IMG/VR virus record: IMGVR_UViG_3300024239_000011 | Location: 248,001-312,000 of that record | Length of the DNA stretch: 64,000 nt | Strand: one strand, 5' to 3' | Part shown: one piece after another, positions 47,601 through 60,881 of the stretch | Numbering within the stretch: position 1 is the stretch's first letter | How the letters are laid out: each line of letters starts with the position of its first letter | Position numbers and translations under genes: made by a program | Notes under the pieces: generated by a model | Told to the model about the DNA's origin: nothing | What the model saw: the letters and a program-made list of their open reading frames with translations, nothing else | Databases searched by the model: none

Positions 47601-50600
47601 AACCGTCCAGCGTCAATGTCTTCCACGATAGTTGAAGCACTGGTGTGTGCGGACAACACCGAGTAATACCGGTTGTCGAATTTAACCTCTTCATATTTTG
47701 AATAGAAGGTATTCGGTGCCCATGACTGAACTTCAAGTGGAATATTGACTACATCATCGTTCGGCAGATCAGCAATGGTACTGTTGTTGGCGAAAAACTC
47801 AACCAACTGCGGACGTGACCGTACTTCTCGTTGACGCAACAAGAATTCAAAGGTCAATTTATTGGTAACGCCACCATAGTTTCCGACGCGGAATGCCCAT
47901 TCATCAAAGAATTTAACTTCTTCCGCGTCCAGCACAAAGAAACTACGCAAGAGTTTTTGCATAGCATCAGAGGTGCCTTTCTGACGCATGGCACCCTGGA
48001 AGAACTGGAACTCGGTCTTAGGATCAAGCAACAGATCATTCATATAAGCGCGACCCTGGTAGCCCACTAAGTGCAGCGAGTAATTACGCAGGGTTGGATT
48101 ATCTACCCCATCTTCAATACCAAAGAAATGACGGAAGTCATCCACGGTCTTTTCGAAGTTTGGGATCAAAACATTGTCGGTCACAATAAAACCGGGGGCA
48201 TCCATGCGCCCAACCCAATCCATTGACCGCGTTGCCGACAGACGGAGACGTGGCTGACGCAGGTTGAATACCGGATCATAGATCAGATCATTGAAAATTG
48301 TCACGTTGTCGAAAATGATAACGTGTTCAACTTCACTGACAAACAAACGGGTCAGATAAATCAATTGGTCGTTACGTGACGTGACCACCAATTCATTACC
48401 GACGCGCGAGACATCGGTTTCGCGCGGTTGTATCATAAAGCCATCGCGATTAAGCATCGAATATGCACCACGCACAATGCGTTCGATATTCTGTACTTCG
48501 CCATGGTCGGTGACGAATTTGACATATTTTGATGCCGGTGACAGTGCAATAGTATTACCCGGTGCCCAACGTCCGAGAGACCAGAACAAAAAGTCCTTGC
48601 CAACCGAGACCCAATCAATCGTCTCTTCGTTGGCAAAATCCATTTGTTCGAAAACCCATCCGTCTTTCTTCAGCCAGCGTCCATAATCCACAAGGAAGTC
48701 AAAAACATCTTGTGGATTGTAAAATTCAGTACCATACGGTACATTAAGAATGTTTCCGGCACGGTTTGCATCAAGATAATGAATTACCGTGATGCCTTTA
48801 TTATTCGGACCAAGATCAAGTGGTTTCCAGAAGGAATCCCCAAACTCTTCACCGGAACGATGGTTGTCAATGCACTTGTATTCAACTCCCTGATTAACAA
48901 CGATATCCCCTGCCGTGTACACAACATGAGCTTGCCATGGACGACCAGTTTTTTCGGTCTTACCAACGGCAACCTTGGTCTTGCGACCATTGATATCACT
49001 TGGAATGGTGCGGAATACTGGATCAACCACATCGTAACCAAACACCTTCCATCCTCGACCGGTCCACTGCACGATTACGCCGCTATAGGTGTGATCGGCA
49101 ATGCTCGGGCTGCGATATAGGAAGACGTTGATGTTTTCGCTCGGGACCAAACCGAAGTTATCGGCACGAGCCTGTAAGGTGTTCTGATCCACAAACCCCG
49201 CCATTTTGTGACCAAGACGCACGTCAATACCACGAATGACCTTACCGAACGCCTCGGTAATATCCTGACCACGGCTTTTGATGTAATCACAAACCCATTG
49301 TTGTACCCCGGTCACGCGATAACGCTGCGGAAGATCAACCTCAGAGGATTCTTCGCCATGCAAGGTCAAATAGCTGTGCGGACGACGGGCACGAATATCA
49401 TCGTACACCCACTGACGGGTTTGCTTCTGGTTGCGATAAATTTCCTTCAGGCGGACGGTATCCCAACAGTATTCGATCAGTCGCACCGGCTTGATCAAAT
49501 ATCCGCTCATGGTAGCAGCGAACGGGAAGTTCGGGCTGCGGCGCCATGCGGTTTCTGTCGGTCCATGATCCCCGAATTTCCATTCCTGCTGTGCTTCAAA
49601 CGCAGTCGGAAGGCGCGAACAAATACCAGCAGATACCGGATCAATCAAATTACCAAGATCATCTACCGGAATGTACTGCGACATTCCGGGACGCTGGTAC
49701 TCTGAATAGGTACCAGCGGTCGGTCCACGAGCGATAATGCCGTTTTCAAGATCGCCCCACAACTTGGTATTGCCGCGCGTATATGGAGCCACGCCGTAAT
49801 GGGCATCCCACCAATCCGGCTTTTGTGACATACCAAGCATTTCCCATGGGTGTGTATGGGGGCGGTCGGTATCAAAATAGTACAAATAGATGCCACGCCA
49901 ATGCCCTGGCAACGGCTGCCCGTCACGATCAGGAACCGCTCCGTAATTCCATGTGAATGGATTGTCGGCAATCCACGTCTGGTTTTCACGATAATTGACG
50001 CGAGACATCGTTGCCCACCGTTCAAAGGCAGGACGGATAATGCTGTTCCATTCAGCCCATGAATAATCGGTCAAATAGCCTGCACCACCCTCACTCGCGG
50101 GGCGCCGGAATTTACCAGATACGTACCGACGATGGTCGAAAATCCGTTCAGCCCCTCGTTGGGCAAAACGCAGCGACGAATTGTTGTAAACGCGCTTCTC
50201 AAATTCGAGTACAACGCTGTTCAGGAACTCATATTCCCCGGTGAAGCTTTCGATATACGAACCATCATGTGCCTGAATAAACTGACGTGGGTTCAGCAGC
50301 GTCTCATCCACTACCATCCCAGGACGGAAAATAGCATAGATGCCCATTTGAGAGGGCGACGGTGGCACGTAGGTGAAATACCCATCATACCGGATCAGAC
50401 GAATTTTATCGGTTTCATTGAGGCTGAAATCGCCAAGCAGACGTATTTCGTCTACGTCAGTCTCGTAGTCCCACCCACGATCCAATAATTTCGGAAATTC
50501 GCCGTTCTTTTCCAAATAGACGAATGATTTTTCGATGTTCTCGCGGGTGCCTGGAATCAGATATTCGTTGACACCGGTAAAGCAGTCCACCGAAACTTCG

Positions 50601-53600
50601 AAAACCTTGAAGTTATCACCCGCCGGGCACATTGTGGAGTATGCAAAGGGGAAATCAACAGTCTTACCAACATTGATTTCTTCCAATGCCCGATTGACGA
50701 AATCTTCAGGGGAAATCAGTCGATCAATACCCTGCTCATAGATATCCACAATCTTACGGATAAATTTGTTACGGAAACGGCTGAACTCATGTTCCGCATA
50801 CTGTATCGACAACATGAAGTCAATGTTTTGATCTGATGCCATAATCATAGTCTTCAACATCGGCGCTCGATGTTGAAGAATTACGCGACCAAACGAACGA
50901 TCCTTTGGGGTGTCACGGTAGTTGTTTACCCCGTACACGTTCCCGTTAAAATTCTTCTGACTCTTCAATATCGTCGTGAAGTGATCAAAGAATTCATTAT
51001 AACTGATTTCACTTACTTCACGAGAATCCGGGTTGCCCTGAAGATTGAACGGAACCTCATAGACGCCAACCAGATTATCTGGCGCTCGCCGCACATAGGT
51101 GTAAATGGTCACAAGGTTATTCTTCGCAACACCGTTACGCAAACTGACAACACCATCAGATACCGAATAATCAGTGTACAAATTGAGTTCTTCGGCATTA
51201 ACCATTACAGAAATGGCATCCGGATCGATCAATTCATCAACGGTTAAGTTGTGCGAAATTGCGAAATCAGTTTGACCTTCGGTAGAGATGTAGGTGTGTT
51301 TGATGCGCTGACGGCTTGGCATATCCACCAAGTACCAGTCGTTTGAATAATCAAAACTGCCATCAATTTTCTGGGTACGATGGAAGTAATACCCCGTAAT
51401 CTCATCCTTATCCAGGGCATAATTGAACCGTTCGGTGGTTAAGTAATTCTTGTAAATGGGATGACCACTTGCGCTGTGTTTGACGCGCATTTCAAGAATT
51501 GTGTCCATTGGAACGCCCGCCGATGCTTCATCGGTGAATCCAAAAACGCGGCTACCGGCGAACGTGGATTCTGGGTAACGCCCCGGATCATCCAAGGCAA
51601 CGCCGTCGATGTCGTAGAGTGCAAATAATGGGGGCTGGTTCGAGTGGGTCTTGCGCTGAACTTCAATCCAGTTGTCGCCATCGAAGCGGAAATCACGGTC
51701 AAGGTTTGAGAACCCGTATCGAGAACGAATGGTGTCGCCAACCGAAGGAAGACCACTTTCATTCTCGCCAACAATGACCGGCGATAGTACCACACGTCCA
51801 GTGGATTTGATACCAGATACACGGTAAATGCGATTGTTGTATTCTGGGTTTGGATCATTGGTGATCAAGATGGTCATACCATCGCGGATCAAAATGCCCT
51901 TCTCGGTATCCCAGATAATCGCGGTGATCTTGGTTTGTGCAGTCCCGGTAGGTTTACGAATGCTTAGTGTGTTATTGGCGTTGATACGATAATCGAAACC
52001 AATACGCACTGGACGATCATTGAAATAGAATACCGCACGCAACGCTTCGTCCGGAGTTAACCCAAGACCCATCGTCGGATTGGATAGATCAATGGTGTAC
52101 GATCCCGCATCGACAAACCAAGTCGAAGTCGGATCATTGGCAGTATCTACCCAGTTTTTACCACGTGCTGATACATCAAGCAGCAAGGGTGCAATACCAA
52201 ACTCACGTAACGGGGGCTGATTGTGAATAAAATCAGGATTGGAAGCAGCGAACCCATTGATCTGAGTGAACGTTAATACGTCTTCCTTAACATCCACATC
52301 ACCAACACGACGTTGACCATACTGATACAATTCCAAATTACGCTTGAACTCAATGATTGGACGCTCAGCGCGAATCGCGTCGTCCGTACCACGGTCGGCA
52401 CGAGCAACGACATCCTCGTGGAACCACCGGTTCCCGCGACTCCATGGATTGCCGTCAATACAACCACGCTCCATCACAAGATAATCTGGACGGGCACTGG
52501 TTGTCGCCAAAGCAACACTACCCCAACCAAGACCCTGCTCGGCATCCCACCCAAATGGTTCAATGCGCAGATTGATTTCTTTTCCAACCCCGGCAACTTT
52601 ATACATACAGGTCTTGTAGGTATACTTGGTGACTTGTTCGAAACCATATGTAACAAAGATGATCAGCATGTTGTTGGTCAGCGCAATCGGCTCGGACGGC
52701 GACGCATACGATGCTTCCCATTTGTCGTCATAGGGGTCAGTCACATCCGGTGGGGTCATCGGATCAAATGGACGCCACGGGTTGTCCTGATTTGCTCGCT
52801 TGTAATGACCACTAAAATCAAAATATTTCTTACCGTTAATGGTCGTGATGAAGTTTTGAATATCAGTATTCGGGTCTTCAATGAAAAATACGTAGGGTGT
52901 GACCGTATAACGACCAAGATCATCCCAGCGATGACCACCTTCACCCTCTGGTTCTTCAATCAGGAATGCAGATACACCAACTCCTTCAATAATGAAAGTC
53001 TTGTTGTTGAACTGATCGCTATTCACGTCGCGGCGAATAGTCAAACGCATTCCACTGGTGAGGGTTAGCGGTTCTACCGTTCCGTCGTGCGGCTCAGTGA
53101 TGCTGTCATCAGACGGCAGCCGATATTTTCCCGTGAATATTAATGGATAATCCGTATTCCCGACCAAAGTTCGTTCCACATCAGTCAAACTGAGAATTTC
53201 AATCGGTTTCGGTCCACGCGGCATCCAATAATACCGTTTGAAATTCATAAGCTTATCGATGTCTACCGGCGGACACCATGAATAAAACTCATTGTCGAAA
53301 AGACGGTTATGGTCGTTTATCAAACCGCCATGAAAACGCAGATGGTTCAATAGATCATCGTAGAACAAAGCATGCGTCACCGAAGCAGTTTCCGTGGCGC
53401 GGCTGATTGCTATGGGTTCCATCGAATAATCTTGGCGTGTCTTTGATGGCTCCTGAATGTAGAAATCCTTTTCAGGGTCAGTATACAATGGATAGCGTCC
53501 AATGTATCCACTGACTACTTCCGATGCCTGTGGCTGGAATAGATGATCTACAGTGGCGCCAAAAAACCGCTGAAGGGTCTGGCTTTGAAGAACCGAAGGC

Positions 53601-53632
53601 AAATGCTTGATTACTTGTCTTTTCTCGACCAT
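38666..53632 (-). CDS. Giant (4988 aa) baseplate/virion structural protein
   Basis: Uninterrupted 15 kb ORF; YINEVKPYHSKIR; YFDTDRPH..PWEM; four W/Y-x4-Y-x2-(G/N)D CBM5/12-like repeats; RVLVKNQ...ENGIY fibre motif; TAAATA at 53664-53669. Confidence 0.85.
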   Translation of the reverse strand: MVEKRQVIKHLPSVLQSQTLQRFFGATVDHLFQPQASEVVSGYIGRYPLYTDPEKDFYIQEPSKTRQDYSMEPIAISRATETASVTHALFYDDLLNHLRFHGGLINDHNRLFDNEFYSWCPPVDIDKLMNFKRYYWMPRGPKPIEILSLTDVERTLVGNTDYPLIFTGKYRLPSDDSITEPHDGTVEPLTLTSGMRLTIRRDVNSDQFNNKTFIIEGVGVSAFLIEEPEGEGGHRWDDLGRYTVTPYVFFIEDPNTDIQNFITTINGKKYFDFSGHYKRANQDNPWRPFDPMTPPDVTDPYDDKWEASYASPSEPIALTNNMLIIFVTYGFEQVTKYTYKTCMYKVAGVGKEINLRIEPFGWDAEQGLGWGSVALATTSARPDYLVMERGCIDGNPWSRGNRWFHEDVVARADRGTDDAIRAERPIIEFKRNLELYQYGQRRVGDVDVKEDVLTFTQINGFAASNPDFIHNQPPLREFGIAPLLLDVSARGKNWVDTANDPTSTWFVDAGSYTIDLSNPTMGLGLTPDEALRAVFYFNDRPVRIGFDYRINANNTLSIRKPTGTAQTKITAIIWDTEKGILIRDGMTILITNDPNPEYNNRIYRVSGIKSTGRVVLSPVIVGENESGLPSVGDTIRSRYGFSNLDRDFRFDGDNWIEVQRKTHSNQPPLFALYDIDGVALDDPGRYPESTFAGSRVFGFTDEASAGVPMDTILEMRVKHSASGHPIYKNYLTTERFNYALDKDEITGYYFHRTQKIDGSFDYSNDWYLVDMPSRQRIKHTYISTEGQTDFAISHNLTVDELIDPDAISVMVNAEELNLYTDYSVSDGVVSLRNGVAKNNLVTIYTYVRRAPDNLVGVYEVPFNLQGNPDSREVSEISYNEFFDHFTTILKSQKNFNGNVYGVNNYRDTPKDRSFGRVILQHRAPMLKTMIMASDQNIDFMLSIQYAEHEFSRFRNKFIRKIVDIYEQGIDRLISPEDFVNRALEEINVGKTVDFPFAYSTMCPAGDNFKVFEVSVDCFTGVNEYLIPGTRENIEKSFVYLEKNGEFPKLLDRGWDYETDVDEIRLLGDFSLNETDKIRLIRYDGYFTYVPPSPSQMGIYAIFRPGMVVDETLLNPRQFIQAHDGSYIESFTGEYEFLNSVVLEFEKRVYNNSSLRFAQRGAERIFDHRRYVSGKFRRPASEGGAGYLTDYSWAEWNSIIRPAFERWATMSRVNYRENQTWIADNPFTWNYGAVPDRDGQPLPGHWRGIYLYYFDTDRPHTHPWEMLGMSQKPDWWDAHYGVAPYTRGNTKLWGDLENGIIARGPTAGTYSEYQRPGMSQYIPVDDLGNLIDPVSAGICSRLPTAFEAQQEWKFGDHGPTETAWRRSPNFPFAATMSGYLIKPVRLIEYCWDTVRLKEIYRNQKQTRQWVYDDIRARRPHSYLTLHGEESSEVDLPQRYRVTGVQQWVCDYIKSRGQDITEAFGKVIRGIDVRLGHKMAGFVDQNTLQARADNFGLVPSENINVFLYRSPSIADHTYSGVIVQWTGRGWKVFGYDVVDPVFRTIPSDINGRKTKVAVGKTEKTGRPWQAHVVYTAGDIVVNQGVEYKCIDNHRSGEEFGDSFWKPLDLGPNNKGITVIHYLDANRAGNILNVPYGTEFYNPQDVFDFLVDYGRWLKKDGWVFEQMDFANEETIDWVSVGKDFLFWSLGRWAPGNTIALSPASKYVKFVTDHGEVQNIERIVRGAYSMLNRDGFMIQPRETDVSRVGNELVVTSRNDQLIYLTRLFVSEVEHVIIFDNVTIFNDLIYDPVFNLRQPRLRLSATRSMDWVGRMDAPGFIVTDNVLIPNFEKTVDDFRHFFGIEDGVDNPTLRNYSLHLVGYQGRAYMNDLLLDPKTEFQFFQGAMRQKGTSDAMQKLLRSFFVLDAEEVKFFDEWAFRVGNYGGVTNKLTFEFLLRQREVRSRPQLVEFFANNSTIADLPNDDVVNIPLEVQSWAPNTFYSKYEEVKFDNRYYSVLSAHTSASTIVEDIDAGRLVETENRWVVKPNREMETIFPLRAINETREGDLPVAGYARVDESDHYALDLTDLSSVHYEILQKGKNFVTGEKIWVYDINDEWQMFSVQNLGTAVVNVTKVEYVSDTETKITVSDTHNLAIDDLIVITTDTKSIPDVRGIHYVKSVPSTTEFIIPVVIDDMFDWTSQGGTTGPAVMKFFPRRFATISARNATLNTGQWLSGDLAYVDDAGNGKYAVYQYNGNNFDTIPVRIQPAKVDNNRIFNAVIYDKKTTEVQQYVHLYDPAKGIIPGTADAEIWYKLEIDPAVYNNGDPKYHRMNPEIAWGGGEEHRLWWDLSTVKFLDYEISDNKYRKYVWGRLAPRATIDVYEWTRSTVPPTEWARQVEINKGKAIEAFDAKPTGSVKDANNPAWCERTEYDPATGDYKTVYYFWVKNKATVPPVEWRKLTTTQVAKFIENPSTFDMPWFAPISPDATIISGVDYLLNDENSIVQVNYRRTDREDNVHREWVLMREGDDRSYPDPLLWRKMTDSLVGFNVEYMDVPDLSLSTVERYGNLFRPRQSWFNDRYMARRIIVERVNTMLTKRPVMQGDLTYLQSSDEGLLTFTEKSPRALVAQKHVGSSIGLLAKIDVDLATATIDGNVDLTGGTFPGTIDRVFVREGNRVLVKNQIDATENGIYVYHENDKVFVRATDCAAGSHLPEGANIYVRRGNDNRGTKWIQCVSNAVVGVDNNNWFEVVGDLDYHMEVDSFDERNAKEIDPDFVLERGTRVLVRGNTSTYGFWSLWSYDPTVAGRWSCDAVQHYKTIDFWSTVDWYDTGYSKLNIPRYVFPSEVERDIHDREVGFSAGDLIRIDKKDIDLWYWQEYQGKVDGEAFGRWKMVAYKNGTIKLSDRFYDESRRQIIKDNHPTDLNAYWETVRLRDGSLEFKAMLKALMGDADIPGLLSKGEINALFFAMVHYAHTEHRMVDWAFKTSFLFIKGINEPLIQEPVLRKDKTDSIIGYINEVKPYHSKIRDFTLSKILPMETGHARVTDFDKPVFPLDRTIKDHAVIDVVWNGDGTYTIADPYTATDFRNSRHHKDWYENFQKIADDHYPVRSMKTTIHFDRVKWIDWYVDGEQALLKLYREHYGQREESTTKRAHRLGDRVWFHNYDGLNQDHWKVVYLRSPNHPIPTRIASLKPGASNRVIVKTPANHNVVAPHYDMNPSAYDANISYVVGDIIRWRTKNYLCIKSYVSTGDFDGEKLKHWSDAIPQIAAYVVIPQPIPEVVLTGDGHTKLFELPFRVDEHDLEVYVDGRLLDWATTANYYTDGDALEISRDNDAKTYTPDYEIVSMEQREDIVIRGTSTGTIALKNIPYHESTISVKVKRNLRGVKAWAAEKVYVVNDLAKHSGSVFVCTTSHTSVDFATDQSNWELITPDAIIPRNGTPRVTNADPLYTFMYGNGQIVMISPTPKSGDQLMITYKTDPGVRLRINETPKDGQTIYIRRRSQTTMVGAYKVMKYVDANTIEIKASLPSDIIFGSDNIPMNLLTYRDDVLTLVNEKGDNITVPYDNTMDPNLLTQAERIMLYYRPTPGMPAKDMRELLDINFKGTRMDGGDLLDTKFSEDVGNHVPVMNFVYNGQDEVPVTYWQDGMDNSLGWGDHIFDSIRDKMDGDVVVVEYNGIVQLSDAYDFYYNTTEDLWKVRFNALPNHGDLITVAVVTNDIVDGVETTMSEKKSTRYYDMNIMGGTFTAPASTSGFDDVIVDGGFFLAGPSKTFEALDGQQDFQLDGAPVVGVIGSADDLNWHARVYVNGRRRLDGYHLENIAGTWHVIFDESVVQGTEVRIELQGKPAMTNPYMDENRPQELIATRTADSLGITVYTEATAGAPSVVSARYEADDVTTHFELRQKPSSRETVFVTVGLDGENMMLEMVSRNPMTGDPLFSSDTAVRADQYYLHWDTGVVELGIAPPKGAVIKITSFSTGGTNVENIDTFVSVGVGEFTLTKLPAATPNIRVWTQAGTQPVTEITEFNVIEQQLFLGVAPTEGTLVTVTYEIEDAASNDFQNNQNQRIVEIARFSPTNGIMPPLMLKNPEGITYSQSHISVVRDGEVLSLGDYSVIKHDTGTHEVVLTDGEPGEVAIVAFNTPNIVKVRTHQYQYTAGEPIILTDVPSPTVPHHGAVLVYKKITEADLICENGQPAGTSIGDPLVADDVGRGIRLMPPTTRYFLGDGGCFAYRFERPITSVADTQIWIGQNTTPLVPVYPAGTVGGDATGTVDVGSFTIPQRFRGPIDANDALPCDGDDDLKAGDYFVIEGYFGFDDGGYDGVPFDNTPKPEGTNVRNWLGVAFAGTWATKGMNRPNPNQTNQNEFGFEDGDMILYLGRGRWSRMITSAGMRNTGNYAASLARAVEEATREIHFFDAPSKNADICFVWYEHGKYDYDIKNGNELHLYGPTFAGLTLEDGDWITVTTFSDDEAMGIRTEVFTATVNGKYPLTRVPSDANSLWVNTNGRRNIYGMDYTIQNSTIGWDNLSWDAYFGWDDNRSRPLVSFNNRHSGDWRVVVTTFTNRSAQQPVGFRLFKNSQDEWEYLRIADAHKTKLNTALDFDDRHMQVVDAKVFVTNNEAAILSRKDVTMYATTATLVVNIDLLSSTPVPPVHVVVSDNAAGGAADGIITHADIAMAINSNADLRAVTISAAITEHGHLIIRRVDGQDFSISDSASDALATAFFGNNVVSSVRPLLTPEAVFVDGERIEYMGIDVVNNRLLNIRRGTGGTSSGIRNIYRNHMEVSDGLKEEFILPGWFDPMNDDAVMIKAEYVDHGKVMVKEYRKESYTVTRNDTDEVVVKFPYAPTEGWVLTFSATVSNWEISGASYPAGTIVVDGGAPQYIPGGYRWEGLLDKGFQGQLDAIPVGTKGVTQADAGRWYQLSRAYDAELLDIRVIIEHEGFVDPETGETRTIEEQLIRYQDWFIDGTILKFRRNIPAPTNGQNNIILHLRSYRGLQYSNSAMAQFLREKPATHYWGN

Positions 53633-53744
53633 ATCGACCTTGACTGTTTAATTAATGCATAGGTATTTACGCCGGTATTATCACCGCAGTTATTTATCCC
53701 GACCGAAAATAAAGCCGGGAACAAATAAAGTTTTCTGGACAGTC

Positions 53745-53773
53745 TTGACAGCATCAATCTAGCGTTGTATGGT
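53745..53773 (+). promoter_or_regulatory. Sigma70-type early promoter
   Basis: TTGACA-17 nt-TATGGT. Confidence 0.6.
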
Positions 53774-53800
53774 ATTCACAACACAGCGGGAGTTATCTCG

Positions 53801-53977
53801 ATGTCCTCGAATACTAAGAAGCGTCATCCGGTCGAATACCTCGGTCATGTTGCCGGGTATGCCACCACCAAGCGCGGCGCTCTGCGCATCATGCGCAAGC
53901 TGAACAGCCTCGTGACCAAGATGGCTTTGAGCAAGGGCAAGAAGCCCGTCTGGCAGGCGGTCGAATGGGAGGGCTAA
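53801..53977 (+). CDS. Small basic hypothetical protein
   Basis: GGAG RBS downstream of the promoter. Confidence 0.65.
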   Translation: MSSNTKKRHPVEYLGHVAGYATTKRGALRIMRKLNSLVTKMALSKGKKPVWQAVEWEG

Positions 53978-53980
53978 GAC

Positions 53981-54463
53981 ATGTCCAGAACTGTTCGTAA
54001 GGTTCCCAATTGGGTGTCCAATCGCCACTGCAACAAGCATTTGGATAAGCCGTGTGCGGTTAGCTCTCATGGCTCCCCGCGCAAGTTCGATACCGACCGC
54101 GACATGTTCATCTTCGAATATACGCATGGGCTGTCGAAGCCGATGAACCTGTTCGCGGGTGACGGGGTTTTGGTTGGTCGCAAGGGCGCCAAGGCGGTCA
54201 AGAAGGCGTATTCCAAGAAGGCGCGTCGTCAGAGCATGGCGGTTCTCGAAGCCGAATTGCTGATGGCGATGGAACCCATCGATCCGATCTTCGACCCCGA
54301 GGATGATTACTTCCCGTCGTATGACGACGATCTGGACCTCGATCCGTTCGATGAGCATTATGCGGCGAACGACGATTGGGATTACGTCGATGACGGGATG
54401 GATTTCTGCGATCCCTGGTACGACGATTACCACTCCCACTATTACCCCATGGCTGCGGAGTAA
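53981..54463 (+). CDS. Hypothetical protein, basic N-terminus and Asp/aromatic-rich tail
   Basis: GGAGG RBS; composition. Confidence 0.75.
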   Translation: MSRTVRKVPNWVSNRHCNKHLDKPCAVSSHGSPRKFDTDRDMFIFEYTHGLSKPMNLFAGDGVLVGRKGAKAVKKAYSKKARRQSMAVLEAELLMAMEPIDPIFDPEDDYFPSYDDDLDLDPFDEHYAANDDWDYVDDGMDFCDPWYDDYHSHYYPMAAE

Positions 54464-54468
54464 CCACC

Positions 54469-54648
54469 ATGTACATGATCACCGGCTACGACGACCTGTG
54501 CATGGACATCAACATCAAGGTTGAGTCCTTCATGGAAGCCATCCAGATCATCCGCAAGCTGCGTGATACGTGTATCGTGTGGCTCACTCGCGAGAGTAAG
54601 ACCCCTGGGAAGTATGTCCCCACCAAGTATTCCACCGCGTGGGTCTAA
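54469..54648 (+). CDS. Small hypothetical protein (59 aa, MYMITGYDD...)
   Basis: GGAG RBS; ends at the terminator. Confidence 0.6.
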   Translation: MYMITGYDDLCMDINIKVESFMEAIQIIRKLRDTCIVWLTRESKTPGKYVPTKYSTAWV

Positions 54649-54650
54649 GG

Positions 54651-54683
54651 GAAAGGCGGGAGAAATCCCGCCTTTTCTTTTTC
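54651..54683 (+). terminator. Intrinsic terminator
   Basis: AAAGGCGGGA-GAAA-TCCCGCCTTT followed by a T-tract. Confidence 0.8.
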
Positions 54684-54746
54684 TATCACTTGACTTTTAG
54701 TACGGTGAATGTCAAAAATCCATAAGCGTTCACCGGAGTTTTCGCC

Positions 54747-55358
54747 ATGCCCTACGACCCCAGTGCTTTCATTCACTTCGCGATGCAGAACGGCGTGTTT
54801 CCTGAAGGCGGGAAGTACGGTGATCGTATTACCTTCACCATCCATGCGCCCAATAATCTAATGTTGGTGTTGGACGCCGGGCGGAATACCGGGGTACTGC
54901 CGCCCTCGTTGGAGTTCGACAAGCGCAACGGTAAGATCACCAAGGTCTGCAATGGGTTCGACAAGTACCCCGAAATGCTAAAGTGGATAATCACCTGCTA
55001 CGTGTCCCAGCGCGTCACCCGTATGACTGGTTTGAAGGTAATCAAGATGACCCAACTGGTCGATTACGACGCTGCCACCCAGGAATTCGACAAGATGGGT
55101 CGCGGCGTCCGCTCTGGCATTCGTGACTGGTTCACGCGCCTGGGGCAGGACATGCTTGCGGTACCAGTGATGGAGGCGCTTGCCCTCACCGAACGTGCGA
55201 TGATACTGCTGTCGAAGTTGACGGAAGAACAGGCGGATGTTCTGTATGAGGAAACGGAAACCGTGCGTCGCAAGTCGCAATTGGGTTTAATCGAATATAT
55301 GTCGGAGCAAGAGATTCTGGTTGAATTGCTCGACCAGATTGAGAAGGAAGTTCAGTGA
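54747..55358 (+). CDS. Hypothetical protein abutting the repeat array
   Basis: GGAG RBS; stop codon 6 nt before the first repeat; no Cas motif recognised. Confidence 0.75.
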   Translation: MPYDPSAFIHFAMQNGVFPEGGKYGDRITFTIHAPNNLMLVLDAGRNTGVLPPSLEFDKRNGKITKVCNGFDKYPEMLKWIITCYVSQRVTRMTGLKVIKMTQLVDYDAATQEFDKMGRGVRSGIRDWFTRLGQDMLAVPVMEALALTERAMILLSKLTEEQADVLYEETETVRRKSQLGLIEYMSEQEILVELLDQIEKEVQ

Positions 55359-55364
55359 TCATTT

Positions 55365-56284
55365 CTGTCGCACCACGATCCGTGGTAATTTCTTAGGTAC
55401 GGTTTGTCCACCATGGTACTATCGCACCACGACTGCCGTGGTATTTCTTCGCTTTTACGGCTGGGTCCATGGCCACGCCCGTCTTTCGGACCACGAGCAG
55501 ATTGCCGTGATATTTGCTTCAAAGAAAGCACAAGGAATGGCGCTCTGCGAAACACTTTCGCACCACGATTGCCGTGGTATTACCAACATTCACGGTAATG
55601 GTTCTGAATCTGCGGCTTTCGCACCACGAGCAACCGTGGTATTGCCTTCCAACGACAGGAGGAATGCATGCGCAGTCTTTCACTTTCGCACCACGAGCAG
55701 ATTGCCGTGGTATGTTTCCCTGATCGGGACGACATCTACGCCCTGTTCAGACTTTCGCACCACGAGCAGATTGCCGTTGGTATTGCTTCGCGCGACCTGA
55801 TCAATTTCCTCGAAGAGATTCGCCTTTCGCACCACGGGTGAATTGTCGTGGTATTTGCTTCCGATGAAATGGAACATGCCGCCAAAACCGACGTACTTTC
55901 GCACCACGGGCAAGTTGCCATGGTATTGCTTCACCAGCAAAAACAGACCGCATGTCGCGATGGTCAGCTTTCGCACCACGGGCAAATTGCCGTGATATTG
56001 CTTCCAGCTTGGTCACCACCAGCGTGTCGCCCTCGCGCTTTCGCACCACGGGCGAATTGCCGTGGTATTGCTTCTCTGACTATCGCCAAGCAGCAGGTCG
56101 ATCTCTATCGCACCACGGGTGAATTGCCGTGGTATTGCTTCCCCCGGCAACTACCTTGCCTTCGTCCATGTTGATCCTTCGCACCACGGGCGAATTGCCG
56201 TGGTATTGCTTCCCATAGCTGCTGGATTTGACAGCATGATGTTCGAGCTTTCGCACCACGGGCGAATTGCCGTGGTATTGCTTC
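55365..56284 (-). CRISPR. CRISPR-like array, 14 repeats and 13 unique spacers (about 26-35 nt)
   Basis: Plus-strand consensus CTTTCGCACCACGGGCGAATTGCCGTGGTATTGCTTC (37 nt); starts at 55365, 55419, 55483, 55555, 55616, 55683, 55752, 55824, 55896, 55968, 56038, 56105, 56176, 56248; hairpin ACCACGG/CCGTGGT; decay increases leftward; minus strand ends in GAAAG (orientation inferred). Confidence 0.9.
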
Positions 56285-56344
56285 ACCGCGCGCCCTGAGT
56301 ACACGTAGCCGTCATGTAACGGGCTGTCATGTGCAGTTATCGAT

Positions 56345-56488
56345 GCATACCACGGTTCTCGTGGTGCGAACGACACCCTGTTCAAGGGCGTCGATTTGTA
56401 TTTGGTAATACACCACGCCAATCGTGGTGCGACAGCTACCTACAATCGTTGCCAACAGTCCTATAACAATACCACGACAATCGTGGTC
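56345..56488 (+). CRISPR. Three inverted degenerate repeats with two spacer-sized gaps
   Basis: ATACCACGGTTCTCGTGGTGCGAAC, ACACCACGCCAATCGTGGTGCGACAG and AATACCACGACAATCGTGGTC are reverse complements of the short-loop variants in the main array. Confidence 0.75.
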
Positions 56489-56563
56489 TTTTTATTTGCC
56501 ATACTATACAGACAGGTGTATGCATGTATGCATGAATGATTAACCGAATCATGAGGTGCAAAT

Positions 56564-56974
56564 ATGTCCTACCCTACTCGCGAAGAAATCCAAGCTGCCG
56601 CTCTGCCGCTGATGAAGGCTCAACAGCTTCGTCTTGGCTTCTATGTAACTGACGATATTGTGGCAGAACTGGCGAAGGAATTCGGCGTCGATCTCAACGA
56701 GAAGATCGAAACCGGTCGCAGCAAGTTCGGCAACCTGTTCGACTGGGTGACTGCTCGGATGACTTCCACCGGGCAGCACGTCAAGATCAAGCCGAAGCAT
56801 TATCGGCTGGTGCTTTTCCCGTCTGTGACCGATCAGCGGGATGCCAAGGTGGACCACAAGACGGCTCCATCCAAGAATGATTTGTTGCTCAAACTGGCAC
56901 AGCAAATCGACACAATGGCGCAGAACATGGCGCAGATCAACGAAACATTCCGCCAGCTTCAAAAGGCGGCGTAA
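56564..56974 (+). CDS. Stand-alone Mrr N-terminal-like winged-helix protein with coiled-coil tail
   Basis: PT.EE....LPLM...IVAELAKEFG...TGRSKF.N..DW....M...G resembles Mrr_N; no nuclease domain. Confidence 0.6.
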   Translation: MSYPTREEIQAAALPLMKAQQLRLGFYVTDDIVAELAKEFGVDLNEKIETGRSKFGNLFDWVTARMTSTGQHVKIKPKHYRLVLFPSVTDQRDAKVDHKTAPSKNDLLLKLAQQIDTMAQNMAQINETFRQLQKAA

Positions 56975-56977
56975 ACG

Positions 56978-57009
56978 AAGAAACCCCGCCACTGGCGGGG
57001 TTTCTTTTT
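56978..57009. terminator. Bidirectional terminator
   Basis: AAGAAACCCCGCC-ACT-GGCGGGGTTTCTT followed by T. Confidence 0.8.
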
Positions 57010-57017
57010 CGAGTTAT

Positions 57018-57251
57018 TCACCAACACTCTTCGCATCGCAATTCGAATACCGTGTCTTGATCACAGTTTTCGGGGATCGTCACTTTCAATTTCGCTCGAT
57101 CTATGTGAAGGATGCGTAGGGTGATTTTCACCGTGACATCAGGAAAGATCACAATGTCGTCAACCAAAGGGACGACAGGCATTGTTTTGGTGAATGATCT
57201 GCTCGACATACCATGGCGAAATGTCATATCGAATAAGACGAGGTATTTCAT
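57018..57251 (-). CDS. Hypothetical protein
   Basis: ATGA overlap with the upstream ORF. Confidence 0.55.
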   Translation of the reverse strand: MKYLVLFDMTFRHGMSSRSFTKTMPVVPLVDDIVIFPDVTVKITLRILHIDRAKLKVTIPENCDQDTVFELRCEECW

Positions 57252-57925
57252 TCCGCTTCGTCCCATTCTTTATCAAACGGACGGATGAATTCCCACCGGT
57301 CATTACACCAACGGATATGTTCACATGGCACTTCACTGTATGGGGTTTTACGCCCATCAATCCAGTCGATCTGCACTCTCTTGGTGTCCGTGTCGATAAT
57401 GACCACTGTACCTTCGCGGTCAGCGTCCTGCCACACCGAATCGCCTTCGAATAGGGTGTGTTCGGTTTGTTCCAAACGACGTTCAAGGGTTGCCATGATC
57501 TCTTCGGCTGACATGGCATACCGTGTGACAACGGTATCCGGTCCCAACAGCCCAAGTGCCCGTGATACCAGCCCATCGATGAAACCAAGTTTCACCCCAT
57601 CACTGGCTTCTTCACCCGCCAGTGTGGACATGAGGCGTGCTGCCATGATTGCTTCGAGGTAGATGTCCAGCTTGGCGACCCGGTGATTGTCGAAACCACC
57701 CGCATAAGCATGTAAGGCACGCGCCAATTCGGCATGTCCGATCCCAGCTTCGTCCGACATGGCATTGAGTGCGATGAGCAGCCCGCGCCCGATATCAGTC
57801 ATCACGTCGTCGGGAACATTTTCACCGCCATGGATACCACGCACCATCAGCACGGAGTTGACCAGATCGACTACTTGCTGGGCAATGACCATTGACAACC
57901 GATCACCAATCACATCTTCAGCCAT
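57248..57925 (-). CDS. Hypothetical protein
   Basis: GAGG RBS before MAEDVIG. Confidence 0.65.
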   Translation of the reverse strand: MAEDVIGDRLSMVIAQQVVDLVNSVLMVRGIHGGENVPDDVMTDIGRGLLIALNAMSDEAGIGHAELARALHAYAGGFDNHRVAKLDIYLEAIMAARLMSTLAGEEASDGVKLGFIDGLVSRALGLLGPDTVVTRYAMSAEEIMATLERRLEQTEHTLFEGDSVWQDADREGTVVIIDTDTKRVQIDWIDGRKTPYSEVPCEHIRWCNDRWEFIRPFDKEWDEAE

Positions 57926-58052
57926 TTTGCCCTCAGTCCCTTTGAAAAGGATAGGATAACGATACTCGGTATGCGTGTCAAGCCGGTGAATTAAAGCCAG
58001 AGATAAATATTGGTTAAATACCACAGACGGTATTTCAGGGGATGGTATTACC

Positions 58053-58637
58053 ATGAATAAGAAGCAAACAATTGCAAAATGCGAAGTTGATGATTTCTTT
58101 GATAAGGGCGGTGCTACCGCCATGGGTCACATCTTCATTCATGACCCGGAAACCGGTGAAGTATTTGTGAATAAACGTAATGCGATTCACTACGAATCAT
58201 TTTCTATAGCCATCATCAAGGCATTGGCCCAAAAACAAGACGGGCACATTTACACGATGGCATTTGGTAATGGAGCCTCGGCGGTATCTGGTATTGGAAC
58301 GATCACTTACTTGACCCCAAATGTGGTTGGGTATGGAGCAGAATTGTATAACCAGACTTACGCTAAGAACATTCTCGAAGACAACATGGAAGTTCGTCAT
58401 ACCCCTGGTGAACTTTATACCGATCTTGTTATTCGAGTAACATTGGGGTTTGGTGAACCCTCAGGACAACGTGCTTTTGATGACGCGATTAGTCTTGAAG
58501 ACGCTTATGTTTTTGATGAAATTGCGTTGAAAGCATTTGACGGCACTTTACTTACACATGTGATTTTTCACCCTGTGCAAAAAAGTTTGAATAGACAAAT
58601 CGAATTAGTTTATACCATCCGCGTCGCGATGGTTTGA
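58053..58637 (+). CDS. Baseplate/tail structural protein
   Basis: NAIHYE, MAFGNG, FDEIALK, LLTHVIFHPVQKSLNRQIE..YT; TAAATA at 58004 and 58015. Confidence 0.75.
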   Translation: MNKKQTIAKCEVDDFFDKGGATAMGHIFIHDPETGEVFVNKRNAIHYESFSIAIIKALAQKQDGHIYTMAFGNGASAVSGIGTITYLTPNVVGYGAELYNQTYAKNILEDNMEVRHTPGELYTDLVIRVTLGFGEPSGQRAFDDAISLEDAYVFDEIALKAFDGTLLTHVIFHPVQKSLNRQIELVYTIRVAMV

Positions 58638-58723: not shown

Positions 58724-59740
58724 TTAATACACCAATTCGTCTTGTTCGTGACCTTCGTAAATGATAATCTGCCCGGATACCGCCAGTTCCTTAGCAATAA
58801 CGACGATGAGCGACTGCGCCTGATCCACGTCGCGTAGGCGTACTGGTCCCATTGCGTCCATGTCTTCCTTAAGCATTTTTGCCGCACGTTCGGACATGTT
58901 CTTCATGAACAAGTCTTTGATGCCATCAGAGGCACCCTTGAGCGCCAGGGACAGTCGGTCTTTTTCCACCTGACGCAGTAATGTTTGGATACCAGCGGCA
59001 TCCAAGCGCACCAAATCCTCGAAGGTGAACATCAGCGCCTTGATCTTTTCCGCCGATTCGCGGTTGCGTTCTTCGAGCGAGGACATCAAGCGGTTTTCGG
59101 TGGTGCGGTCGAGGTTGTTGAAAATATCTGCCATCAATTCGTGGGTATCGCGGCGTTGGGTGCGGGCGAGGTTGCCCATAAATTCGGTACGCAAGATATC
59201 TTCAACCTGATCCAACACTTCCTTCTGTACCGCCTCCATACGCAGCATGCGCATCACCACTTCCATGGCGAAATTTTCCGGCAGTAGTGCCAGCACGCGG
59301 GCGGCGTGGTCGGGCTTGATCTTGGCCAGCACGACGGCGACGGTCTGCGGGTATTCGTTCTTCAGGTAATTGGCCAGCACCGCTTCGTTGACGTTGCCCA
59401 GCTTGTCCCACATGGTACGACCAGCGGGACCGCGAATCTCTTCCATGATTCGGCTGGCTTGATCGCTGGGTAATGCCTTAGTGAGAAGTCGTTCCGTGCT
59501 TTCGATGGAACCGACTAGCGTACCAGTGGTCAAAAGGTTGTCTGCAAATTCTGCATACAGAGTTTCGATCAATTCAGGCGTAACGGTGCCTAGGTTCGCC
59601 ATGATCTGCGACACTTCCTTGATTTCGTCATCATCAAGGCGGTGCAGAATTTGCGACCCGTGATCTTCCCCGAGTGCCATGAGGAAGATGGCGGCTTTTT
59701 GTGGACCCGTCAGGCAACGATAGTCGGTCTTTATCGGCAT
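58724..59740 (-). CDS. fliG: Flagellar motor switch protein FliG, alphaproteobacterial type
   Basis: [54 protein letters not shown]; full length; TAAATA at 59769-59774. Confidence 0.97.
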
Positions 59741-60084: not shown

Positions 60085-60807
60085 TCAGTCACCCTCGTTT
60101 TCCAATGGTTGCCACCCGTTCGAGCCGCAGACTTCGAGCGGTTTGAAGCGGGTTTTATATTTCATGGTTTGTGCCCCTTTTACCCAAAATCCCAGATAGA
60201 AATACGGAAGGTTTTGGCGTTTGAGTTCTTCAATTACCCAGAGGATCGCAAAAGTACCTAGCGACCGTTTATCCATGGACGGCTCGAAGAACTGGTAGTT
60301 TCCAGAAAACCCGTCATTCAATCGGTCGATCAGGGTCACTCCGATAAGATGCCCATTGGCATCCCGGAATTCGTATAGGAACGTTTCAATCGGGCTGATC
60401 TCAACCATCGACCGATAGTCCTCAAAACTCATCAACGCCATGTCACCGCCAGTGTGTCGCGTTTCCTGATAGCGTGTGAACAATCCGTATTGTTCCTTGG
60501 TCGCAACATTCTTCACGCGAGTAACAATCAAATCGGTATTTGTCTTGATAATTTTGCGCATGGTGCGGTCAGGAGCAAACCCATCAACAACAATACGCAC
60601 AGATTTACACTCCGAGCAGCCCGTGCAGGTTGGAGTATAGATGATGTTATGACTGCGCCGATAGTTTGACGCTGCCATATCACTATAAAATTTCTCGGCA
60701 TTTTTCAGGCTGGAAATTTCAGTCACGGTTTTACGTTCAGCCCGTGCCGGAAGATATGGGCACGGCAGCGGTGACGTTGTGAAGTAATATGGAGATTTTC
60801 TCGTCAT
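60085..60807 (-). CDS. ate: Bacterial ATE/Bpt family aminoacyl-tRNA--protein transferase
   Basis: PCPYLP..ERK, YRRS...Y.P.C..C..C.SVRI, Y...RH..G.M, SLGTF.IL, YLGFWV, M.YK.RF.P.E. Confidence 0.93.
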   Translation of the reverse strand: MTRKSPYYFTTSPLPCPYLPARAERKTVTEISSLKNAEKFYSDMAASNYRRSHNIIYTPTCTGCSECKSVRIVVDGFAPDRTMRKIIKTNTDLIVTRVKNVATKEQYGLFTRYQETRHTGGDMALMSFEDYRSMVEISPIETFLYEFRDANGHLIGVTLIDRLNDGFSGNYQFFEPSMDKRSLGTFAILWVIEELKRQNLPYFYLGFWVKGAQTMKYKTRFKPLEVCGSNGWQPLENEGD

Positions 60808-60881
60808 TGAACACCTGTGATACACCACCCGCCATGTTAGCGTTCTGGTTGTGCATTGTCAATGATCGCCTAAATACGATC

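What the first reader, a model, noticed from the sequence alone, without database searches (positions are those of the whole stretch)
54747..56974. Array flanked by an unknown 203-aa protein and a nuclease-less Mrr_N-like protein
Seen: the 203-aa ORF stops 6 nt before repeat 1 with no terminator, so its transcript would run into the array. A winged-helix plus coiled-coil ORF follows the inverted arm. Terminators at 54651 and 56978 bracket the unit. The central gap contains a direct repeat GC(C/T)GTCATGT. Inference: these may be the array's effector or regulator; the Mrr_N-like protein could alternatively be a decoy for Mrr-type restriction.
Basis: inference. Interest (0 to 1): 0.6.

Follow-up and report, generated by a model that had tools for sequence, protein, structure and literature searches.

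The report
Cas-less type IV-A CRISPR locus in megaphage
The repeat array is the leftover, cas-less version of a phage-borne type IV-A CRISPR-Cas cassette; the small winged-helix protein beside it travels with that cassette in related giant phages and is a candidate regulator, whereas the 203-aa protein is an unrelated neighbour.

Summary
The window is part of a 543-kb megaphage related to Atu_ph07 and Phosso.

The array has 14 repeats of 37 nt at 55365-56284, then a 61-nt gap, then three inverted degenerate repeats. It is a CRISPR array. A sister strain (97-99% identical flanks, same metagenome) carries an 8.5-kb type IV-A cassette at exactly this site, with DinG/Csf4, Csf2, a Cas6e-like protein, Csf3 and its own arrays. 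A third related phage carries the same cassette at another genome position. The window's genome has none of these cas genes, so its array is a cas-less allele. The gap sits where the cas genes lie in the relatives, and the inverted arm is a decayed second array. By analogy, the main array's sense strand is minus, antisense to the 203-aa ORF.

The 203-aa protein has two distant homologs without arrays and is frameshifted in the cas-bearing strain, so it is a bystander. The 136-aa protein has a 35%-identical homolog directly downstream of the third phage's array, so it is cassette-linked, probably as a dimeric DNA-binding regulator. Its Mrr_N likeness rests on one predicted fold only.

The parts
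54647..54680 (.). Intrinsic terminator (GGCGGGA-GAAA-TCCCGCC plus T-run) that closes the upstream 59-aa gene and bounds the unit on the left
   Evidence: I17
54690..54719 (+). Sigma-70-like promoter match (TTGACT-18-AAAAAT) upstream of the 203-aa ORF
   Evidence: a consensus match only
54747..55358 (+). 203-aa orphan protein. It is a conserved small phage family that is not linked to arrays, so it is a bystander flank gene
55365..56284 (-). Main CRISPR array with 14 repeats. The consensus is 37 nt, minus-sense GAAGCAATA-CCACGG-CAATTCGC-CCGTGG-TGCGAAAG, with 13 spacers of 24-35 nt. The best-kept repeats are at the right end, next to the gap. Short-loop degenerate copies are at the left (trailer) end
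56005..56037 (-). Spacer 10. Its reverse complement encodes REGDTLVVTKL, the conserved serine-recombinase motif. It matches a recombinase gene on Methylobacterium plasmid pAMS5c at 31 of 33 positions, and many other plasmid and phage recombinase genes
56285..56346 (.). Central gap of about 61 nt, at the position the cas genes occupy in the sister strain and in the third phage. It contains GCCGTCATGT (56308-56317) and GCTGTCATGT (56323-56332). The function of that pair is unknown
56347..56497 (+). Right arm: three degenerate short-loop repeats in inverted orientation (56347-56371, 56407-56435, 56468-56487). It is the remnant of the cassette's second, divergent array. The last hairpin is followed by a T-run (56489-56497) and looks like a terminator
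56496..56563 (+). Upstream region of the 136-aa gene, conserved with the sister strain. It holds a TGTATGCA tandem with ATGCAT palindromes (56517-56538) and an ATGAT/ATCAT inverted repeat over the RBS. This is a candidate operator and promoter
   Evidence: the operator role is inferred
56564..56974 (+). 136-aa protein. Residues 1-86 form a predicted winged helix with an Mrr_N-like fold, and residues 104-135 form a heptad-patterned helix. The gene accompanies the type IV-A cassette in related phages
56978..57006 (.). Intrinsic terminator with 14-nt perfect arms plus a T-run, bounding the unit on the right
   Evidence: I16

Best explanation
The locus is the cas-less allele of a megaphage-borne type IV-A CRISPR-Cas cassette that has two divergent arrays. 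In the full cassette (sister strain B and related phage C) one operon, 237aa-cas6e-csf2-dinG, reads into the main array. A second operon, csf3-193aa, reads into a second array in the opposite direction. In this genome the cas genes are absent. What remains is the main array (55365-56284, sense strand minus), a 61-nt gap where the cas genes would be, and the decayed second array (56347-56487, sense strand plus). No cognate Cas6 or Csf proteins are encoded in the 543-kb genome. The array is therefore most likely a decaying orphan that could make crRNAs only if Cas proteins were supplied in trans. The 136-aa gene lies directly downstream of an array end, in the array's sense direction, both here and in phage C. 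I take it to be a cassette accessory. I propose that it is a dimeric DNA-binding transcription factor (winged helix plus coiled coil) acting on the dyad or tandem TGTAT-type elements in its own upstream region. It does not recognise the repeats, because strains A and B share a 99% identical protein but have different repeats. The 203-aa gene is an unrelated neighbour whose stop codon happens to mark the left junction of the variable cassette. Shown: the array anatomy, the allelic replacement, the cas identities in B and C, the absence of these cas genes here, the wHTH homolog beside C's array, and the array-free contexts of the 203-aa homologs. Inferred: the strand of transcription, decay versus use in trans, and DNA binding and regulation by the 136-aa protein.
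For: Array geometry and hairpin. Spacer 10 derives from a serine-recombinase gene, with 31 of 33 positions matching and similarity ending at the spacer borders. Sister strain: window 55357-56495 is replaced by L056 1405-9932, with flanks 97-99% identical. PADLOC hits there are typeIV_DinG 2.7e-41, typeIV_Cas7 3e-13, Cas6/Cas6e 1e-12 and typeIV_Cas5 1e-25. Strain B has its own 35-nt repeat array and five inverted degenerate copies in front of the 136-aa gene. Both alleles occur in JGI metagenome 3300034072. Phage C has the same cassette (50-62% identity), a main array and a full inverted second array. Phage C's cassette lies in a region syntenic with G000 at about 484-494 kb, not about 304 kb. 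No cas homologs in G000: tblastn; PF08798, PF13307 and PF01867. Sense strand: the arrays are co-directional with dinG in B and C; the 3' ends are xCGxxAG; a bacterial type IV-A relative has a 36-nt repeat ending ACTGAAAG that is co-directional with its cas genes; and G.U wobbles appear only in the minus sense. Repeat decay: only 2 of the 7 repeats nearest the gap are identical here, against 7 of 7 in B and 8 of 8 in C. wHTH homolog next to C's array. The 203-aa relatives lack arrays and the gene is frameshifted in B.
Against: Only three cassette instances are known, and the wHTH link rests on two genomic contexts. Those contexts may not be fully independent. A 514-aa gene near C's cassette shares 46% identity over 169 aa with a gene about 8 kb from the wHTH gene here. 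No cas-bearing cassette with the window's own repeat type was found. 'Loss of cas genes' is therefore inferred from architecture, not seen directly. No RNA data could be obtained, so strand, processing and expression are all untested. Repeat 8 shows a wobble that favours the plus strand. Both AF2 models were poor (pLDDT 46 and 56), and Foldseek and VIA-align found no significant match for the N-domain. The bacterial type IV-A relative examined has no wHTH homolog within 20 kb. The same locus sits on an 869,618-bp ENA contig that could not be searched. cas genes outside the 543-kb record are therefore not excluded.
Confidence: 0.65

Rival explanations
1. The 136-aa protein is an ordinary neighbour. 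Its position next to the cassette in two phages reflects shared ancestry of a larger block or an insertion hot spot, not function.
For: Between strains A and B the gene lies in the conserved flank, not in the exchanged segment. A second gene near C's cassette resembles a gene about 8 kb away in G000. No wHTH homolog lies near a bacterial type IV-A relative. None was found in 401 sampled genomes of that class, in PLSDB or in the phage collection.
Against: Among the window's six flank genes tested, only this one has a homolog in the 20-kb locus of phage C. That homolog lies 84 nt from the last repeat and in the array's sense direction, the same arrangement as here.
Confidence: 0.2
2. The 136-aa protein is a nuclease-less Mrr_N decoy or anti-restriction factor that interferes with host Mrr or McrB-type enzymes, and it is unrelated to the array.
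For: The ESM Atlas model of the protein matches six Mrr_N cluster sets over residues 1-86, with TM 0.52-0.53 by query and up to 0.62 by target. It has no catalytic domain.
Against: The Pfam Mrr_N HMM gives no hit, even in a single-family search of the genome. The gene co-locates with the CRISPR cassette in two contexts. Winged-helix folds are generic DNA binders.
Confidence: 0.1
3. The cas-less array is functional in trans. Its transcripts would be processed and loaded by Csf/Cas6 proteins from a co-infecting sister phage or a host plasmid, or would act as a repeat decoy against such systems.
For: The cas-bearing allele coexists in the same metagenome. The repeats share architecture and the 3' xCGxxAG end with those of B and C. 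Every repeat still folds into a hairpin. Viral arrays and solitary repeats that exploit or inhibit foreign Cas proteins are documented (PMC11656645, PMC10651486).
Against: The stem and loop sequences differ from those of B and C (13 of 37 columns invariant). Repeats near the presumed leader have accumulated substitutions. No bacterial array with this repeat was found among 185,579 species representatives. No cross-targeting was seen between the A, B and C spacers and the available genomes.
Confidence: 0.25
4. The 203-aa protein is the array's effector or processing factor, and its transcript is the array precursor.
For: There is a 6-nt gap between its stop codon and repeat 1, with no strong terminator in between.
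Against: Homologs at 42% and 30% identity lie in contexts without arrays, cas genes or the wHTH gene. The gene is frameshifted in two independent assemblies of the cas-bearing strain. The sense strand of the array is most likely the opposite strand. The protein has no family or fold assignment.
Confidence: 0.04
5. The repeats are not CRISPR but protein-binding iterons, such as an origin or a partition site, bound by the winged-helix protein.
For: The repeats are palindromic, there are two inverted arms around a centre, and a DNA-binding-type gene lies adjacent.
Against: The loop length between the half-sites varies from 3 to 8 nt. The 'spacers' are unique, and one derives from a foreign recombinase gene. 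The allelic site holds a bona fide cas operon with an array of the same design. The 99% identical protein in strain B faces quite different repeats.
Confidence: 0.03

Closest known systems
[quoted passage not shown]
   Same: The allelic and related cassettes encode DinG, Csf2, Csf3 and a Cas6e-like protein and have no Cas1/Cas2. The arrays sit beside the cas genes. One spacer here matches a plasmid or MGE recombinase gene, in line with the MGE-targeting bias described for type IV.
   Different: The cassette is carried by 250-540-kb lytic-type megaphages. The repeats are 35-37 nt with a 66-72-nt period. Two divergent arrays flank the cas genes. A small winged-helix gene accompanies the cassette. 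The copy in this window has no cas genes at all.
Orphan or mini CRISPR arrays and solitary repeat units (Racr) in viruses (PMC11656645; PMC10651486)
   Same: This is a virus-borne repeat-spacer array without cas genes in the same genome.
   Different: Those elements have repeats identical to host arrays and usually only one or two spacers. Here there are 14 + 3 repeats. No matching host array was found. The cognate machinery seems to belong to sister phages rather than to the host.
Mrr_N (PF14338), the N-terminal winged-helix domain of Mrr and McrB-type restriction enzymes
   Same: The predicted fold of residues 1-86 resembles it (TM 0.52-0.62). The layout is similar: helix, strand, two helices, then a G-x-x-F-x-N...W motif and a terminal strand ending in YRL.
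   Different: The Pfam HMM gives no match. There is no nuclease or AAA domain. A C-terminal coiled-coil-type helix is attached. The gene is linked to CRISPR, not to restriction genes.
Transcription regulators encoded in CRISPR-cas loci (PMC11656645 Fig. 2 legend lists a 'tr. regulator' in plasmid CRISPR loci)
   Same: It is a small gene of DNA-binding type at the edge of a cas/array locus.
   Different: No sequence relation has been shown, and regulation here is inferred only.

Membership tests
CRISPR array | Near-identical direct repeats of about 23-47 nt, regularly spaced by unique spacers of similar length | tested here: met
   There are 14 repeats of 30-38 nt (37-nt consensus), 13 unique spacers of 24-35 nt, and a period of 54-72 nt.
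CRISPR array | Spacers derived from foreign genetic elements | tested here: inconclusive
   One of 13 spacers (spacer 10) matches serine-recombinase genes of plasmids and phages, best 31 of 33 positions, search E 2e-4. The others have no match in the phage or plasmid collections.
CRISPR array | Polarity: conserved repeats at the leader end and degenerate repeats at the trailer end | tested here: met
   The best-conserved repeats are next to the gap and the short-loop degenerate ones are at the far end. Strain B and phage C show the same pattern relative to dinG.
CRISPR array | Spacer turnover between related genomes | tested here: not met
   Four other contigs with this allele are 99.96-100% identical across the array. 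Variation exists only as whole-cassette replacement.
Type IV-A CRISPR-Cas | csf2 (Cas7), csf3 (Cas5), cas6/csf5 and dinG/csf4 next to the array | tested here: not met
   They are absent from the window and from the 543-kb record. They are present at the allelic site in strain B and in phage C. The window therefore holds an array of this family, not a complete system.
Type IV-A CRISPR-Cas | Repeat of the same kind as in arrays adjacent to csf genes | tested here: inconclusive
   The architecture is the same (7-9 nt, 6-7-bp stem, 5-8-nt loop, then a 7-8-nt 3' end xCGxxAG or xxxGAAAG), and the lengths are similar (35-37 nt). Only 13 of 37 columns are invariant against B and C.
Type IV-A CRISPR-Cas | No adaptation module (cas1/cas2) | tested here: met
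   PF01867 is absent from G000. No cas1/cas2 gene appears among the called genes of the B and C loci.
Mrr_N (PF14338) | Match to the family HMM at or above its gathering score | tested here: not met
   There is no hit at E <= 0.1 against Pfam, and none at E <= 10 in a single-family six-frame search of the genome.
Mrr_N (PF14338) | Winged-helix fold superposable on Mrr_N domains | tested here: inconclusive
   The ESM Atlas model (pLDDT 0.67) matches six Mrr_N cluster sets at TM 0.52-0.62 over residues 1-86. My own AF2 model (pLDDT 56) gave nothing significant.
Viral mini-array / RNA anti-CRISPR (Racr) | Repeat identical or near-identical to a host CRISPR repeat | tested here: not met
   A pattern scan of 185,579 species genomes gave only five single chance hits and no array. 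The host is unknown, so the test is weak.

The most novel reading that the evidence does not exclude
Within one megaphage population, a full type IV-A cassette and a cas-less 'array plus wHTH' allele are maintained side by side at the same site. The cas-less phage would borrow Csf/Cas6 proteins from co-infecting kin, or jam them with its repeat RNAs. The 136-aa winged-helix/coiled-coil protein would be a previously undescribed dedicated type IV-A accessory that controls array or cas expression.
Probability: 0.15. Interest if true: 0.8.

Novelty: new variant of a known kind. Interest (0 to 1): 0.55.

Why it matters
[quoted passage not shown] This lineage of 250-540-kb phages carries a distinct variant with long repeats and twin divergent arrays. 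It also shows a natural presence/absence polymorphism of the cas genes at one site. That polymorphism offers a way to ask how virus-borne arrays persist without their own Cas proteins. The study also nominates a small winged-helix protein as a testable new accessory or regulator of type IV-A systems. It removes the 203-aa orphan from consideration.

Tried and rejected
Sequence-family searches on both ORFs gave nothing significant. These were Pfam, PHROGs, PADLOC, NCBIfam and PDB sequence searches, plus a PDB search with the wHTH profile.

Word-based homolog searches found only the proteins themselves.

Single-sequence AF2 models were poor (pLDDT 46 and 56). Foldseek against PDB and BFVD, the atlas shape search and VIA-align wide on the 136-aa model gave no significant N-domain match. 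Only the long C-terminal helix aligned.

tblastn of both proteins against the phage collection, and of the 136-aa protein against plasmids, found no match.

Repeat-pattern scans were unproductive.
- IMG/VR and the GTDB genomes gave only single chance hits.
Two of the single hits were contigs labelled human-gut metagenome assemblies. I did not examine or use any of these single-hit loci.

The search for related loci in IMG/VR found nothing for strain B DinG, strain B Cas6e, the wHTH alignment or the DinG alignment.

Spacers of A, B and C gave no cross-matches against G000 and the other loci. Phage C's array gave no match against plasmids or phages.

No wHTH homolog was found in 401 sampled genomes of the class of a Rhizobium genome.

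The 869-kb ENA contig could not be searched.

I considered scanning all 581 ORFs of the genome against PADLOC through large reference lists. I dropped this to avoid very long typed calls, and used tblastn plus three family searches instead.
Full report
**Context.** The window is G000:C1:248001-312000 of a 543,035-bp IMG/VR virus record. A neighbouring 194-aa protein (58053-58637) is 46-52% identical to proteins of Sinorhizobium phage Phosso and Agrobacterium phage Atu_ph07. It also has homologs in the Rak2/GAP32-type jumbo phages. In Phosso and Atu_ph07 that gene directly follows the giant virion protein on the same strand. Here 4.4 kb (53633-58052) separate the 4988-aa ORF from it, and that stretch holds the finding. 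Rfam and tRNA scans of the window found nothing.

**Observation.**
- The 203-aa ORF runs 54747-55358, and repeat 1 starts at 55365.
- The 136-aa ORF runs 56564-56974.
- Hairpin plus T-run terminators lie at 54647-54680 and 56978-57006.
- GCCGTCATGT and GCTGTCATGT lie at 56308-56317 and 56323-56332, with 3 matches in the window against 0.32 expected.

One correction applies. On the + strand the first two degenerate repeats are hairpins with T-rich tails, and the scan scores them as terminator-like.

**The array.** There are 14 direct repeats between 55365 and 56284.
- The consensus is 37 nt, with a 6-7-bp stem and an 8-nt loop.
- The 13 spacers are unique and 24-35 nt long.
- The period is 54-72 nt.
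- The four right-most repeats are identical or nearly so. The left-most have shortened loops and substitutions. This is the usual leader-to-trailer gradient.

Three further copies in inverted orientation follow a 61-nt gap, at 56347-56371, 56407-56435 and 56468-56487. They are short-loop copies, and the last carries a T-run. Every copy folds as a hairpin.

Spacer 10 (56005-56037) matches serine-recombinase genes on many plasmids and some phages. The best match is 31 of 33 positions to Methylobacterium plasmid pAMS5c. Similarity stops at the spacer borders. Its reverse complement reads REGDTLVVTKL, the conserved resolvase motif. No spacer matches the phage's own genome.

**The decisive comparison.** The 203-aa and 136-aa proteins have no family assignment. 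Word-based searches return only the proteins themselves. Looking up near-identical proteins found contigs of a sister strain, 'B' (ENA ERZ4201046 NODE_195, and JGI 3300034072 contigs).

The flanks of B are 97-99% identical to the window. Window 55357-56495, from the stop codon of the 203-aa ORF to 68 nt before the 136-aa ATG, is replaced in B by 8.5 kb. That segment encodes the following.
- A 199-aa orphan.
- An M50-peptidase/pentapeptide fusion.
- DinG/Csf4 (PADLOC typeIV_DinG, 2.7e-41).
- Csf2/Cas7 (3e-13).
- A Cas6e-like protein (1e-12; Pfam PF08798, 1e-11).
- Csf3/Cas5 (1e-25).
- Two unassigned proteins of 237 and 193 aa.

[quoted passage not shown] Its array has 11 repeats of 35 nt. The seven perfect copies lie next to the dinG 3' end and four short-loop copies lie distally. 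It has the same design as the window's array but a different sequence. Five inverted degenerate copies lie after the csf3-193aa operon, just before the 136-aa gene.

A Csf3 homolog (62% identity) led to a third phage, 'C' (a 251,722-bp ENA contig). It has the same gene order at 50-62% identity. Its main array has 18 repeats, and a full second array of at least 8 inverted repeats follows the 193-aa gene.

The window's 'inverted arm' is therefore the remnant of the cassette's second array. The 'central gap' marks where the cas genes sit in the relatives.

**Absence of cas genes here.** tblastn with all nine cassette proteins of B finds nothing in the 543-kb genome. Searches with PF08798, PF13307 and PF01867 are also empty. 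Both alleles occur in the same metagenome, JGI 3300034072. Copies of the window's allele from four other assemblies are identical across the array.

The window's repeats are less uniform than those of the cas-bearing relatives. Only 2 of the 7 repeats nearest the gap are identical here, against 7 of 7 in B and 8 of 8 in C. This fits relaxed constraint after loss of the cognate Cas proteins.

**Strand.** Four observations bear on the sense strand.
- In B and C the main array is co-directional with, and directly downstream of, dinG. The second array is co-directional with csf3-193aa.
- In that sense the repeats end GCGAAAG (window), UCGUUAG (B) and UCGAUAG (C) after the stem.
- A distant bacterial type IV-A locus, found with the Csf3 alignment, has a 36-nt repeat ending ACTGAAAG with a 65-66-nt period. 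It too is co-directional with its cas genes.
- Substitutions in window repeats 3, 9 and 10 give G.U wobbles in the minus sense but C.A mismatches in the plus sense. Repeat 8 is the one counter-example. Phage C's consensus stem pairs fully only in the minus sense.

I therefore read the main array as minus-sense. A read-through transcript from the 203-aa gene would then be antisense to the crRNAs. This is inference, because no RNA data could be obtained.

**The 203-aa protein.** An exhaustive HMMER search found two relatives, P0004 (197 aa, 42% identity) and P0005 (228 aa, 30% identity), as well as a fragment from strain B. P0004 lies in a related phage contig, tightly packed among other genes. 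That contig has no array, no cas gene and no wHTH homolog. P0005's 1.6-kb contig also has no repeats.

In strain B the gene carries 42 nt in place of 10 nt at window 55051-55060. This shifts the frame, and it is seen in two independent assemblies. The protein is real and conserved, but nothing ties it to the array. Structure prediction failed (pLDDT 46; Atlas pLDDT 0.47).

**The 136-aa protein.** It is 99% identical in strain B, where it faces a different repeat type. It therefore cannot be a repeat-sequence-specific binder for both.

tblastn found a homolog in phage C, a 129-aa gene (L178 3758-4147). It is 43% identical over residues 6-82 (E 1e-14) and 35% over the full length, including the C-terminal helix. 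It starts 84 nt after the last (trailer) repeat of C's main array and runs in the array's sense direction. Here the 136-aa gene follows the second array in the same way, 73 nt after its last hairpin.

None of the window's other flank genes (203, 160, 59, 291 and 82 aa) has a homolog in C's 20-kb locus. C's cassette lies between genes whose homologs map to G000 at about 484-494 kb, not about 304 kb. The wHTH gene has therefore moved with the cassette.

There is one caveat. A 514-aa gene near C's cassette shares a 169-aa stretch with a gene about 8 kb from the wHTH gene here.

**Fold of the 136-aa protein.**
- The ESM Atlas model (pLDDT 0.67) matches only Mrr_N-containing clusters over residues 1-86, at TM 0.52-0.62.
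- The Pfam Mrr_N HMM gives no hit, even in a single-family search.
- My own AF2 model was too poor to test the fold.
- Residues 104-135 form one predicted helix with a 3-4 hydrophobic spacing.

**Upstream regions of the wHTH genes.** The upstream region here holds a TGTATGCA tandem with ATGCAT palindromes (56517-56538). In phage C it holds a perfect 10-bp inverted repeat, TATACATACA-N5-TGTATGTATA. A dimeric autoregulator would fit both. This is inference only.

**Searches for further relatives of the wHTH.** No further relatives were found in the phage collection, in PLSDB, in IMG/VR or in 401 sampled bacterial genomes. The bacterial type IV-A relative has none within 20 kb.

**Comparison with what is known.** Type IV-A systems are described as plasmid-borne, lacking adaptation genes and nucleases, dependent on DinG, and aimed at other plasmids. 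Only occasional (pro)phage examples are reported (PMC7038947, PMC11656645, PMC11519345). Jumbo phages are known to carry CRISPR systems and arrays that lack parts of the machinery (PMC11656645).

This locus is a new variant of that kind. It belongs to a megaphage lineage carrying a long-repeat, twin-array type IV-A cassette. The lineage shows a natural cas-less allele and has a candidate winged-helix accessory gene. The window's locus itself fails the membership test for a complete type IV-A system because it has no cas genes. It is best filed as an orphan array of that family.

**Verdict.**
The 136-aa protein is plausibly a cassette-linked regulator. The 203-aa protein is not connected with the array. 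Neither protein is the effector.
- Interest is moderate.

Noticed in passing
window 38666-53632 (-): A 4988-aa ORF, the counterpart of the roughly 4.5-kaa 'virion structural protein' of Phosso and Atu_ph07. A weak CBM_5_12 hit is on record.
   Followed up: no
window 58724-59740 (-): A phage-borne full-length FliG flagellar motor switch protein with the FliG_N, FliG_M and FliG_C domains (E 1e-35 to 1e-42). This is unusual cargo for a phage.
   Followed up: no
window 60085-60828 (-): A phage-borne arginine-tRNA-protein transferase (ATE_N plus ATE_C, E 3e-37 and 3e-17), an N-degron pathway enzyme.
   Followed up: no
L017 (ENA ERZ27245855 k141_178484): The identical locus sits on an 869,618-bp contig, although the IMG/VR record is 543,035 bp and is rated complete. 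The genome may be larger, or the contig may be a concatemer. The contig could not be searched.
   Followed up: partly
L056 1406-2881: Strain B's cassette begins with a 199-aa orphan and a 290-aa M50 metalloprotease fused to Qnr/MfpA-like pentapeptide repeats. Both lie between the 203-aa gene and the array.
   Followed up: partly
window 57018-57266 (-): An 82-aa ORF convergent with the 136-aa gene gives a weak PADLOC Csx19 hit (E 0.0078 over 30 residues). This is probably chance.
   Followed up: no
L056 8290-8376 and L178 9920-10000: The divergent cas promoter region of strain B and phage C shares a conserved AATTAGGGTTGAC element. It is absent from the window's central gap.
   Followed up: partly
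L184 (G012:C48) about 12994-13160: A bacterial genome in the class of a Rhizobium genome has a distant type IV-A locus (Csf3 and DinG at 28% identity). It carries a small array of 36-nt repeats, GTTGCGCGCACCCTGCTTTTGCGGGGTGACTGAAAG, with a 65-66-nt period.
   Followed up: partly
L178 1464-3008 versus G000 312,769-313,272: A 514-aa gene beside phage C's cassette shares 46% identity over 169 aa with a gene about 8 kb to the right of the wHTH gene in this genome. It may be a shared structural-protein domain or a trace of a larger shared block.
   Followed up: partly
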